DNA of 64,000 nt from Octopus bimaculoides. Lineage: Eukaryota. The DNA is taken from assembly GCF_001194135.2 (NCBI RefSeq), contig NC_068987.1, positions 12,567,900-12,631,899 of the forward strand, written 5' to 3'. The position numbers and the translations under genes are program-made. Shown here in pieces: positions 33,401-36,400 of the stretch (position 1 is its first letter; each line of letters begins with the position of its first letter). The notes under the pieces are model-generated. The model was not told the DNA's origin, searched no databases, and saw only the letters and a program-made list of their open reading frames with translations.

Positions 33401-36400
33401 TGCTCACTGCATAAGTAACTAGTTCTCCATACTGTCATACTTAGACTTTTTCGAATTAAATATGCAGAGTAATAATTCCTCACAAGACTGAAGGATGCCC
33501 TTCAACATATAAACTTTTAAAATCATGAAAATACATTCAAACATTATGTTTGTGTGTTCTGGTACCATATAAATTTTAAGCATCCTAATTCTTGTAGTTT
33601 TAACGAATTTGCTTCATTTTTATCAGATACTAATATATGAAATTAATTGCAATTATCTATTTATTCTCTTTAATTTTATTGGATTAAAGTCGTAGCATAT
33701 AAACTAAGACACTAATGAAGTGGCCAATAAACAGCAATTTAATTATCAGTATTAATTTATTGCTTTAGAATGCATATATTTTTGGTAAATTTACTAATTA
33801 AAATAATATCTATAAAATTACCTGCAACAATAATAAGCAAAATTTGCTTGTAAAATCATTGACAATTGTAAAAGATTTCCACTAAGACAGGAAAGAGATT
33901 AAGAAAGTTGAAAATTGAGTATAAGGATCAATTCAAAAGTTACTGTCGCTTTCATTGCTCAGAAACTCAATAGGTCGTCAGATACACACTGAAATATTCC
34001 CAGCATTCAGTTTGAAACTAGGCCTGAATTAAAAAAACAGTTTATAAACTGCTAGTTTTTCTGTATTTGAGAAACTACTTCCTATATGTTTATTTGTAAA
34101 ATAATAAATATGTTTAGCTAAAGATTTGATATTAAACTTTTCTTGATTATGATTAAATTTGTATGGATGGATTACAAAATACTTTGCTTTCATGTTAAAA
34201 CATAAAGCAATTAATTTAAGTCTAAAGGATGTATGACTTAATAAATTTTAAAATGTACAATAACATTTGGCTCTTATTTTATAATTAGAAATCGTTTTGA
34301 GCATAGAGACTCTGTGACTCTTATGCAAGGATATTTAGACTAAATATATGTGCATACTGTTATGTAACTTAATTTCATGCACATTTTTACTTAGTTACTT
34401 TGTTAATACTTATTTAATATATATATATATATATATCTATACATTAAAGATAAATACAATAAAAATATTTAAGTATAGGTATATATATATATATATAAAT
34501 TTATATATATTCACATATGCATATAGTACTTTCATATCTTCAGTTTTCTATTATCAACTTTATTTAGTATATCGAAATATAATTAAATAGATAGATAGAT
34601 AAAGAGATAGGAATTATTGTTGGGAACATAGTGTGTACCTCCTTTTCTTTAATTCTATGTTGTAATGTTGGCCAATCAGGAATCACATCTGCCAAAGATG
34701 CTCGACGCATCTGTCGAGAATTGCGACGCTGGTTTTCAAGAGCCTCAAGTTTTTCGGCCGACACTTTCATGATGGGTAAGTCAGTGCTCTCAACTGACTG
34801 TCGTCGGCTGGCTGAATCTTTCTGTAGTAGACAGAGCAGGGCAAACATAAACTCACACATGCATGATGGCATCTCAAGACACATTTGATAAGAGGAAGTT
34901 TCAACCACATTCACTGTAGAACTTGGTTTGATGCTGTCAAACATTTACTGGTACTTACACATAACCTAGTAACAAACTTGAGCAATGTTGGAAAAAATGT
35001 AAAAGCAAGGTGAAGGATAATTTTTCAACTTATAAAAATGGATTTTTTCAAAGTGGAAAAGGAAAGAATGAAAAATTATAAGAAAAGAAGTACATTTTTG
35101 CTGATTAAAAGATATTAGATATCTTTTTATTACCACATATTTATGTTAATTGTTTATTTGAATTTAAAATGTACTAGATATGCATAAGTTTTGATTGCTA
35201 ATTTAATTTAATTTCATTAATTATTAAAACTAAAAATATTTTTTTCTATTTAATTTTCTGATTTTCATGGTAGATGCAGCAATGTAACATTAAGCTCCAT
35301 CAAAACAAATCCAAAGTTCTCTTTGAATTTTCAGCAATCTATGTTGCTGATGCACATAAACGTCTTATTTTTGAGTATTACAGTTTAATATTTCTCCAGC
35401 CCTAGAACGTGGCACATCATGTCTGCATAAAAAGAAATAAAATGATTCTGATTGAACCTCAAAACCAGATTGTAGACATGTGAAGCTGGGAGCTTATTTC
35501 ATACTACTGTAGTGATTAATATAAACTGAACTGATTCAAAATGAAGAATTTTATGTATGTCTTTTCGATATGTTTTGAAATACTTGTGAAAATAAGCGTA
35601 ATGCCTTGACTTTTGATTTTATAACAAATAGAAATAAATGCTTTCTGTAGTAAATTTTTGATATTGTTAAACGTAATTGACTTGACTTTCATCATAATTT
35701 CAGCAATTTTCTATTTCTTTTTGTCTTGACAATGAAGAGGAATCAGTTTTTAGAGTTTAGTGTTGAAAGGGTTTATGCCATATATTAAGACTGGCTGATA
35801 TCTTTAAACTACAATACCCACAGTGAAACTATGAATTAAATATCTAACCTGTTCAGTCTCTGGTGTTACAGATGATTTGAGCTGATTTATATGACGTCCC
35901 ACCCATGTCATCATAGAAGGTGGACATTAAACGATGACGATGAAGAGTGAACAGGCTGATCACTCATTTTAAGACTGATATAGATATATGAGTAGAGTTT
36001 TAAGTGAAACACTTGCTTCATTTACCTGAAACTATCAGATGATCCACTTCATCATACACAGTGGATTAATCAAAAAGCCAGATTAATACTCAAAATTCTA
36101 TTTATAAATTTATTTGTATCCTAATTGCATTGAGAAATGTAGATTGACTGTATGAATATCTGAAATATTCATAGTTGCAAAAATTGTATTATTTCTCAAA
36201 CAATTTTAATAATTCAGGATCTAGATTCCTCATACGAGTAGTGGTAGATAATAAAGTAGACTATAAAAGAAATACATATTTAAATTTAGGTGATATGGGC
36301 ATTTATTGTCTTTATATCTGTTATTGGAAAAAGCAGATATTAAAATAAACTACAATAAAAAAAATGTTTCAAATCTTAAATGTGATTATTTTAGGGTCTC

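What the first reader, a model, noticed from the sequence alone, without database searches (positions are those of the whole stretch)
34639..34870. D1-like catch-regulatory PKA exon with three RRxS sites, symmetric and flanked by splicing-factor motifs
Seen: a 183-nt phase 0-0 exon with RRQS, RRNS and RRAS, the last in [18 protein letters not shown]. Within about 45 nt upstream on the sense strand are UGCAUG (34858-34863) and UGCC/UGCU. Known: Mytilus twitchin D1 (RRPSLVDVIPDW..., recalled from memory) is a PKA site whose phosphorylation relaxes catch; UGCAUG binds RBFOX and YGCY binds Muscleblind; catch-like holding has been reported for cuttlefish skin papillae. Inference: this cephalopod retains, and may have multiplied, the catch switch, and can include or skip it in frame.
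Basis: partly seen in the sequence, partly recalled or inferred. Interest (0 to 1): 0.7.

Follow-up and report, generated by a model that had tools for sequence, protein, structure and literature searches.

The report
Twitchin D1 linker exon, deeply conserved
This is the exon of the giant muscle protein twitchin that carries the protein-kinase-A "D1" site known from mussel catch muscle; it is real and could be skipped in frame, but its three kinase sites are ancient, are shared with other molluscs and in part with a crustacean, and so do not by themselves indicate catch.

Summary
Window 34639-34821 (minus strand) is a 183-nt, phase 0-0 exon with AG/GT boundaries. It encodes RRQS, RRNS and [21 protein letters not shown] lies 42 nt upstream, with two YGCY in the pyrimidine tract.

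The gene is a twitchin/projectin-type giant: I-set Ig domains, then Fn3-Fn3-Ig repeats. The exon is the last of four small exons encoding the linker between two Ig domains. The literature places mussel D1 (Ser-1075) in that linker.

- "Retains D1" is supported.
- "Multiplied" is not supported. Sites 2 and 3 are (nearly) invariant in 30 divergent sequences and site 1 is present in most. A Daphnia giant-gene locus carries the same linker.
- In-frame skipping is structurally possible. It is favoured by a weak GUACAC donor that recurs in distant taxa, by the longest introns in the window, and by intron flanks 92-95% identical to a related species against an 85% background. No transcript evidence could be obtained.
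- UGCAUG is conserved only in that close relative.

This is a new member of a known kind, of moderate interest. Its main use is that it allows a direct test of the cuttlefish-papillae catch question.

The parts
34639..34821 (-). Exon D: 183-nt phase 0-0 exon encoding the C-terminal 61 residues of the Ig-Ig linker of a twitchin-type gene
   Evidence: tblastn to Sinanodonta P0017 residues 901-967 gives 55% identity, E 5e-13. There are 36 real homologues. Only 2 synonymous changes against the related species L001.
34663..34707 (-). [15 protein letters not shown]: the D1-type PKA site (Ser42 of the exon) with the invariant SL...I(P)DWP.L motif. The core RRASL equals that of Kemptide.
   Evidence: RRxSL is present in 30 of 30 aligned sequences, and I47, P51 and L53 are invariant. 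The Kemptide identity is from established knowledge.
34717..34728 (-). RRNS: the second PKA-consensus site, inside a predicted helix
   Evidence: RR is invariant and Ser is at least 90% conserved. Predicted helix spans residues 22-39.
34795..34806 (-). RRQS: the first PKA-consensus site
   Evidence: RRxS in 15 and RKLS in 2 of the 17 aligned sequences that cover it.
34633..34638 (-). Weak, non-consensus donor GUACAC
   Evidence: the six neighbouring donors are GTAAGT, GTAAAT or GTAAGG. GTACACA recurs at the same junction in L009, L011 and L014.
34822..34991 (-). Upstream intron flank, with acceptor AG at 34823-34822 and pyrimidine tract. It is unusually conserved against the related species.
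   Evidence: 8 differences in 170 nt against a 15.3% background, binomial P about 1e-5.
34858..34863 (-). UGCAUG (RBFOX-type hexamer), 42 nt upstream of the exon
   Evidence: Conserved in L001. Absent from the same position in L002, L008-L012 and L014.
34835..34843 (-). UGCC and UGCU (YGCY) within the pyrimidine tract
   Evidence: 4.1% of random 45-nt windows hold two or more.
34484..34638 (-). Downstream intron flank, moderately conserved
   Evidence: 13 differences in 155 nt, P about 0.008.
44631..44725 (-). Exon C (95 nt, phase 1 to 0): (V)[31 protein letters not shown], a further RRxS site in the same linker
   Evidence: Matches P0017 residues 869-898. The C-D-E order is conserved in L010 and L012.
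51406..51464 (-). Exon B3 (59 nt, phase 2 to 1): [20 protein letters not shown]
52219..52264 (-). Exon B2 (46 nt, phase 1 to 2): [15 protein letters not shown], carrying a DFRxxL motif
   Evidence: The same motif is in Sinanodonta and in Daphnia L015.
53175..53420 (-). Exon B: main part of the Ig domain preceding the linker ('Ig7' by homology), ending in phase 1
54498..54591 (-). Exon A: start of that Ig domain. It also holds an RRAS ([10 protein letters not shown]...).
21633..21900 (-). Exon E: the Ig domain following the linker ('Ig8'), starting in phase 0
   Evidence: I-set E 6e-26. 57% identity to P0017 residues 964-1053, E 9e-28. In Lottia P0059 the exon D end is joined to this Ig.

Best explanation
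The exon is the orthologue, in this (probably cephalopod) genome, of the twitchin exon that carries the D1 phosphorylation site of mussel catch muscle. It encodes the last 61 residues of a linker of about 128 residues between two Ig domains, built from four small exons (B2, B3, C, D).

The linker contains, in order:
- a DFRxxL motif;
- an acidic stretch;
- an RRLS site;
- in this exon, RRQS, a predicted helix containing RRNS, and the invariant RRASL-x3-IPDWP-x-L motif.

Inferred mechanism, by homology with Mytilus: when unphosphorylated, this linker with its flanking Ig domains tethers thick-filament-bound twitchin to actin. cAMP-dependent kinase phosphorylates the RRxS serines, above all the RRASL one, and releases the tether.

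The exon can be left out without breaking the frame. It has the hallmarks of a regulated cassette (weak conserved donor, very long flanking introns, conserved intron flanks), so tissues may choose whether twitchin carries this switch, as reported for mussel.

Shown here: exon structure, orthology, and deep conservation of the sites.
Inferred: phosphorylation, actin tethering, and regulated splicing.
For: Gene identity:
- I-set and fn3 hits on neighbouring exons.
- The order is Ig, linker, 5 Ig, then Fn-Fn-Ig-Fn-Fn-Ig-Fn. It is collinear with Sinanodonta woodiana KAL3842488.1 from residue 736 to 1663.
- PMC3835035 describes this layout as the projectin/twitchin pattern.

Position:
- D1 is Ser-1075, between Ig7 and Ig8 (PMC12040844).

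Conservation:
- 36 homologous ORFs or proteins.
- R32, R33, R39, R40, S42, L43, I47, P51 and L53 are invariant.
- The exon order C-D-E is kept in L010 and L012, and D-E in L002.
- Lottia P0059 joins the exon end to the next Ig.

Function:
- Phosphorylation of twitchin by PKA releases catch and lowers F-actin and thin-filament binding (PMC12040844).

Cassette features:
- 183 nt, with neighbours ending and starting in phase 0.
- Donor GTACAC against GTAAGT-type donors in the six neighbouring exons.
- The same GTACACA donor occurs in three distant loci.
- Flanking introns are 9.8 and 12.7 kb.
- Flanks are 95% and 92% identical to L001 against an 85% background.
- PMC6059360 cites Kusaka 2008 for a catch-muscle-specific D1-containing isoform in Mytilus.
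Against: - No transcript, isoform or phosphorylation data could be reached, so inclusion could be constitutive.
The residue-level match to D1 rests on a recalled peptide plus an unnamed ORF (P0011) that carries it.
- 'Ig7' and 'Ig8' are labels by homology, because the N-terminal Ig domains lie outside the window.
- Conserved islands also occur deeper in the intron (about 36405-36520), so flank conservation is not specific to exon borders.
- UGCAUG is not conserved beyond the close relative.
- Presence of the motif in Daphnia argues that the role is general rather than catch-specific.
- The taxon 'cephalopod' was not verified.
Confidence: 0.7

Rival explanations
1. A constitutive linker exon. 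It is present in every twitchin transcript and acts as a general PKA (or other basophilic kinase) input that tunes twitchin-actin drag or relaxation rate in ordinary obliquely striated muscle. It would have nothing to do with catch or with exon choice. The upstream UGCAUG and YGCY would be chance features of a pyrimidine tract.
For: - The motif is conserved in a non-catch animal (Daphnia) and in many unnamed taxa.
- Annotated models in Sinanodonta and Lottia include the exon.
- TGCATG is not enriched in the window and is not conserved in other loci.
- Conserved islands exist elsewhere in the intron.
Against: - The weak GUACAC donor recurs across distant taxa.
- The exon has the longest flanking introns in the window.
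- Flank conservation is elevated.
- A tissue-specific D1 isoform is reported in Mytilus (PMC6059360).
- The Daphnia motif exons are annotated as a separate small gene inside the giant gene, which hints at optional use.
Confidence: 0.3
2. The conserved SL-x3-IPDWP-x-L element is mainly a docking motif for a partner such as actin, myosin or a phosphatase or kinase scaffold. On this reading its binding is not controlled by phosphorylation, and the RR-x-S context is conserved for binding rather than as a kinase site.
For: - Conservation extends well beyond the kinase consensus (I47, P48, W50, P51, L53).
- A helix is predicted over residues 22-39.
- No Pfam family or solved structure explains the motif.
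Against: - The RR and Ser positions are as invariant as the IPDWP core, and two to three further RRxS sites accompany it.
- In Mytilus the linker is a demonstrated PKA target with a mechanical effect (PMC12040844).
Confidence: 0.1

Closest known systems
Mytilus galloprovincialis twitchin, D1 site (Ser-1075) in the Ig7-Ig8 linker (Funabara 2003; isoforms: Kusaka 2008)
   Same: - Same gene family and the same linker position.
- Same RRxSL..IPDWP motif, as recalled and as found in P0011/P0049.
- Accompanying extra PKA-type sites and a DFRxxL motif upstream.
- D1-containing isoforms are reported to be tissue specific (via PMC6059360).
   Different: - Different class of mollusc, whose muscles are obliquely striated rather than classical catch smooth muscle.
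- The local sequence is RRAS instead of RRPS.
- No biochemical or splicing data exist for this gene.
Insect and crustacean projectin PEVK-NTCS-1 region between the two N-terminal Ig tracts
   Same: - A unique, partly highly conserved segment sits immediately before the second Ig tract.
- The region is encoded by many small exons, with known alternative splicing (PMC3835035).
- The Daphnia locus L015 shows DFRxxL, then RRxSL..IPDWP exons, then Ig, inside an 8789-residue gene.
   Different: - Whether insect NTCS-1 itself contains the motif could not be tested.
- Daphnia has three tandem motif exons where this gene has one.
- PMC3835035 states that the role of NTCS-1 is unknown.
Cardiac myosin-binding protein C M-domain (analogy only, from general knowledge)
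   Same: A linker between two Ig domains of a thick-filament protein, carrying several RRxS PKA sites whose phosphorylation loosens binding to the partner filament.
   Different: No sequence homology was shown. It belongs to a vertebrate protein of a different family.
[quoted passage not shown]
   Same: Exon B2 encodes DFRSLL in the same linker.
   Different: There is a single copy here. Actin binding was not tested.

Membership tests
Twitchin/projectin (UNC-22-type) giant muscle protein | N-terminal Ig tracts separated by a unique linker, followed by repeated Fn3-Fn3-Ig modules | tested here: met
   Pfam I-set and fn3 hits. The order Ig, linker, 5 Ig, Fn-Fn-Ig-Fn-Fn-Ig-Fn comes from tblastn. 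The pattern is as described in PMC3835035.
Twitchin/projectin (UNC-22-type) giant muscle protein | Collinear similarity to a molluscan twitchin | tested here: met
   Collinear HSPs cover P0017 (Sinanodonta woodiana KAL3842488.1) residues 736-1663. That record is itself named only 'hypothetical protein'.
Twitchin/projectin (UNC-22-type) giant muscle protein | MLCK-like kinase domain near the C-terminus | not testable with these tools
   The 3' part of the gene lies outside the window.
Twitchin D1 phosphorylation site | Located in the linker between Ig7 and Ig8 | tested here: met
   The exon lies between exons B and E, which are both I-set Ig domains. The D1 location is from PMC12040844. Ig numbering is by homology only.
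Twitchin D1 phosphorylation site | Sequence aligns to the D1 peptide of Mytilus | tested here: inconclusive
   The named Mytilus sequence was not obtainable. The recalled string RRPSLVDVIPDW is present in the unnamed homologues P0011 and P0049, and aligns to [12 protein letters not shown] here.
Twitchin D1 phosphorylation site | Phosphorylated by cAMP-dependent protein kinase | not testable with these tools
   Only the consensus is shown. The RRASL core is identical to Kemptide (general knowledge).
Twitchin D1 phosphorylation site | Phosphorylation releases thin-filament binding or catch force | not testable with these tools
   Known for Mytilus only (PMC12040844).
Regulated cassette exon (RBFOX/MBNL type) | Length divisible by three and compatible phases of neighbouring exons | tested here: met
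   The exon is 183 nt. Exon C ends in phase 0 and exon E starts in phase 0.
Regulated cassette exon (RBFOX/MBNL type) | Sub-optimal splice site and conserved flanking intron | tested here: met
   The donor is GTACAC against six GTAAGT-type neighbours. Flanks are 95% and 92% identical against an 85% background, based on one species pair.
Regulated cassette exon (RBFOX/MBNL type) | (U)GCAUG conserved near the exon across species | tested here: inconclusive
   It is conserved in L001 only. There is no TGCATG within 300 nt in seven other loci, and GCATG occurs upstream in two of them.
Regulated cassette exon (RBFOX/MBNL type) | Transcripts with and without the exon | not testable with these tools
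   No RNA data were reachable.

The most novel reading that the evidence does not exclude
The DFRxxL ... RRxSL-x3-IPDWP linker may be an ancestral protostome module of twitchin/projectin. It would be a phosphorylation-releasable thick-to-thin filament tether, encoded by optional mini-exons with an unusual conserved GUACAC donor. On this reading it is the same thing as the function-unknown NTCS-1 segment of insect projectin. Bivalve catch would then be an exaggeration of a general mechanism, and cephalopods could switch it on by exon choice in muscles that hold posture, such as skin papillae.
Probability: 0.3. Interest if true: 0.65.

Novelty: new member of a known kind. Interest (0 to 1): 0.4.

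Why it matters
Gonzalez-Bellido et al. (PMC6059360) left open whether the catch-like holding of cuttlefish papillae uses a D1-containing twitchin isoform. This finding shows that the D1 exon exists as a discrete, in-frame-skippable unit, and it gives exact exon borders. That makes the question testable with junction PCR, isoform-specific probes or antibodies.

The wider comparison also shows that the D1 motif and its companion sites are much older than catch muscle. This changes how their presence should be read, and it suggests a function for a conserved but unexplained part of arthropod projectin.

Tried and rejected
- Word-indexed protein searches with the exon peptide and with a spliced Ig-linker-Ig query found only one ORF or nothing. 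That database holds few annotated metazoan proteins, so absence there means nothing.
- Attempts to read the primary D1 papers all failed. These were Funabara 2003, 2007 and 2009, Siegman 1998, Butler 2010 and 2011, and Kusaka 2008.
- Full-text searches for the motif strings found no relevant paper.
- Pfam has no family for the exon.
- A search for paralogous or mutually exclusive copies of exons C and D in the window found none.
- Deep conservation of UGCAUG was looked for and not found.
- I considered base pairing between the upstream GUGUG and the GUACACAC donor. I dropped it because the single upstream substitution in L001 breaks that pairing.
- The profile search for named relatives added only Lottia.
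- P0012, a bacterial repeat protein, was rejected as a spurious hit.

Full report
**Observation**

On the minus strand the sequence reads ...tttgccctgctctgtctactacAG|AAAGATTCAGCC...AAAGAAAAGGAG|GTACACAC. The exon is 34821..34639, 183 nt. It translates without stops to [69 protein letters not shown] and [15 protein letters not shown] sit at 34806-34795, 34728-34717 and 34707-34663. TGCATG is at 34863-34858 on the sense strand. TGCC and TGCT lie in the pyrimidine tract.

Three RRx[ST] sites occur in only 7 of 100,000 shuffles of the peptide. The splicing motifs are weaker evidence:
- TGCATG is not enriched in the window: 49 found against 41+-6 expected.
- 1.4% of random 45-nt windows hold TGCATG, 4.1% hold two or more YGCY, and 0.08% hold both. 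This comparison is post hoc.

**The gene**

Minus-strand open stretches across the window encode I-set Ig and fn3 domains. An exhaustive HMMER search with the exon peptide gave 38 hits. One of them, P0012, is a bacterial repeat protein and spurious.

The one long real hit is P0017, which is KAL3842488.1 from the bivalve Sinanodonta woodiana. It contains four Ig domains, a PEVK-like repeat, an Ig, a 146-residue linker, further Ig domains, and then Fn3/Ig repeats.

tblastn of P0017 against the window is collinear from residue 736 to the end:

| Element | Window position | Content |
|---|---|---|
| Exon B | 53420-53175 | Ig domain |
| Exon B2 | 52264-52219 | [15 protein letters not shown] |
| Exon B3 | 51464-51406 | [20 protein letters not shown] |
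| Exon C | 44725-44631 | [32 protein letters not shown] |
| Exon D | 34821-34639 | the finding |
| Exon E | 21900-21633 | Ig domain |
| Downstream | to window start | four more Ig, then Fn-Fn-Ig-Fn-Fn-Ig-Fn |

This is the twitchin/projectin layout described in PMC3835035. The kinase end of the gene is outside the window.

**Phases**

Exon boundaries were read from the DNA.

| Exon | Phase in to phase out | Length |
|---|---|---|
| B | ends in 1 | 246 nt |
| B2 | 1 to 2 | 46 nt |
| B3 | 2 to 1 | 59 nt |
| C | 1 to 0 | 95 nt |
| D | 0 to 0 | 183 nt |
| E | starts in 0 | 268 nt |

Exon D can therefore be skipped alone. B2 and B3 together (105 nt) can also be skipped in frame.

**Is it D1?**

The review PMC12040844 states that Mytilus twitchin is phosphorylated by PKA at D1 (Ser-1075, between Ig7 and Ig8) and at D2. 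It also states that phosphorylation releases catch and reduces binding to F-actin and thin filaments. The exon lies in exactly that linker by collinearity.

I could not obtain the named Mytilus sequence or any paper that prints the D1 peptide. In the alignment it lines up with [12 protein letters not shown].

I therefore regard orthology of the exon as established. Residue-level identity with D1 is very likely but not formally closed.

**Are the three sites a cephalopod multiplication?**

No. In an alignment of 30 sequences, each from a different 50%-identity cluster:
- R32, R33, R39, R40, S42, L43, I47, P51 and L53 are invariant.
- E26, S35, P48 and W50 are at least 90% conserved.
- Site 3 is RRxSL in 30 of 30.
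- Site 2 is RRxS in 29 of 30.
- Site 1 is RRxS in 15 and RKLS in 2 of the 17 sequences that reach it.

The Sinanodonta linker has five such sites. Real multiplication is seen elsewhere. In Daphnia pulicaria three successive mini-exons each carry RRxSL(..IPDWP). They follow a DFRAML exon and precede Ig exons. They lie inside the span of an 8789-residue gene on the same strand, yet they are annotated as a separate small gene.

The module is therefore older than molluscs, and its presence does not diagnose catch.

**Splicing**

No RNA evidence was reachable. The indirect evidence is as follows.

1. Donor strength. The exon D donor is GAG|GTACAC. The six neighbouring donors are GTAAGT, GTAAAT or GTAAGG.
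2. Donor conservation. The same GTACACA donor occurs at the orthologous junction in three unrelated contigs (L009, L011, L014), and GTACAAC or GTATCACA occurs in two more. By my count, 14 of about 38 homologous ORFs read Val-His just past the exon end, which corresponds to GTNCAY. A weak donor kept over such distances suggests that it is needed.
3. Intron length. The flanking introns (9.8 and 12.7 kb) are the longest in the window.
4. Flank conservation. A contig from a related species (L001) is 85% identical in deep intron. Against it, the exon has two synonymous changes. The 170 nt upstream have 8 differences (P about 1e-5). The 155 nt downstream have 13 differences (P about 0.008). UGCAUG is conserved there.
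5. Published precedent. PMC6059360 cites Kusaka 2008 for a D1-containing twitchin isoform specific to catch muscles in Mytilus. It names detection of that isoform as the test for cuttlefish papillae.

Evidence against regulated splicing:
- UGCAUG is absent within 300 nt of the exon in seven other loci.
- Conserved islands also occur deeper in the intron.
- Gene models in Sinanodonta and Lottia include the exon.

I put regulated inclusion at a little under even odds.

**Structure and mechanism**

AlphaFold on the alignment predicts no globular fold. It gives a helix over residues 22-39, which contains the RRNS site, and a short turn at 43-46 just after the D1-type serine (mean pLDDT 73). This fits a flexible linker with a short linear motif.

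The mechanism I commit to is the one established for Mytilus. The unphosphorylated linker with its neighbouring Ig domains binds actin. Phosphorylation of the RRxS serines by PKA releases it.

My confidence in each step:
- Orthology: about 0.9.
- The phospho-switch operates in this species: about 0.6.
- Tissue-specific exon choice: about 0.45.

**Verdict**

It is a new member of a known kind. Its practical value is that it gives exact exon borders for testing the papilla-catch hypothesis. Its conceptual value is that the D1 module reaches arthropods and may correspond to the unexplained NTCS-1 region of projectin.

The source taxon was not verified. The nearest named relatives are molluscs.

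Noticed in passing
window 34631-34638 (-); L009, L011, L014 at the orthologous junction: An atypical 5' splice site, GUACACA(C), is shared by distant taxa at this one exon. By my count, about 14 of 38 homologous ORFs read Val-His just past the exon end, which corresponds to GTNCAY.
   Followed up: partly
window about 36405-36520 (-): An intronic island about 98% identical to the related species, against an 85% background. It looks like a pyrimidine tract + AG + 47 nt + GTAAAA. 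Spliced after exon C it would run into a stop codon, so it could be a poison exon or a regulatory element. It contains GCATG.
   Followed up: partly
window 52219-52264 and 51406-51464 (-): Two further linker mini-exons. One encodes a DFRxxL motif (DFRSLL). Together they are 105 nt, so joint skipping keeps the frame.
   Followed up: partly
L015 9468-11663 (Daphnia pulicaria CM038029.1): A DFRAML exon, then three RRxSL(..IPDWP) mini-exons, then Ig exons. They lie inside the span of an 8789-residue gene but are annotated as a separate 120-residue gene, LOC124344317.
   Followed up: partly
window 54498-54591 (-): Another RRAS ([10 protein letters not shown]) lies just before the Ig domain that precedes the linker. 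Sinanodonta has GRAPS at the corresponding place.
   Followed up: no
window 62613-62933 (-): A 107-residue open stretch rich in Asp and Glu, with no Pfam match. It is not collinear with the twitchin-like protein. It may be a transposon remnant or an unrelated exon.
   Followed up: no
window 2778, 5196, 5440, 12559, 16759, 22180-22189 (-): Several other sense-strand TGCATG copies lie within a few hundred nt of Ig/Fn3 exons of the same gene. The overall count is not above chance.
   Followed up: no
window 3.3-3.5 kb, 43.4-44.1 kb, 55.5-55.8 kb, 59.8-59.9 kb: Runs of N (assembly gaps) flanked by TA/CA/GA microsatellites. GC content is about 0.19-0.37 throughout.
   Followed up: no
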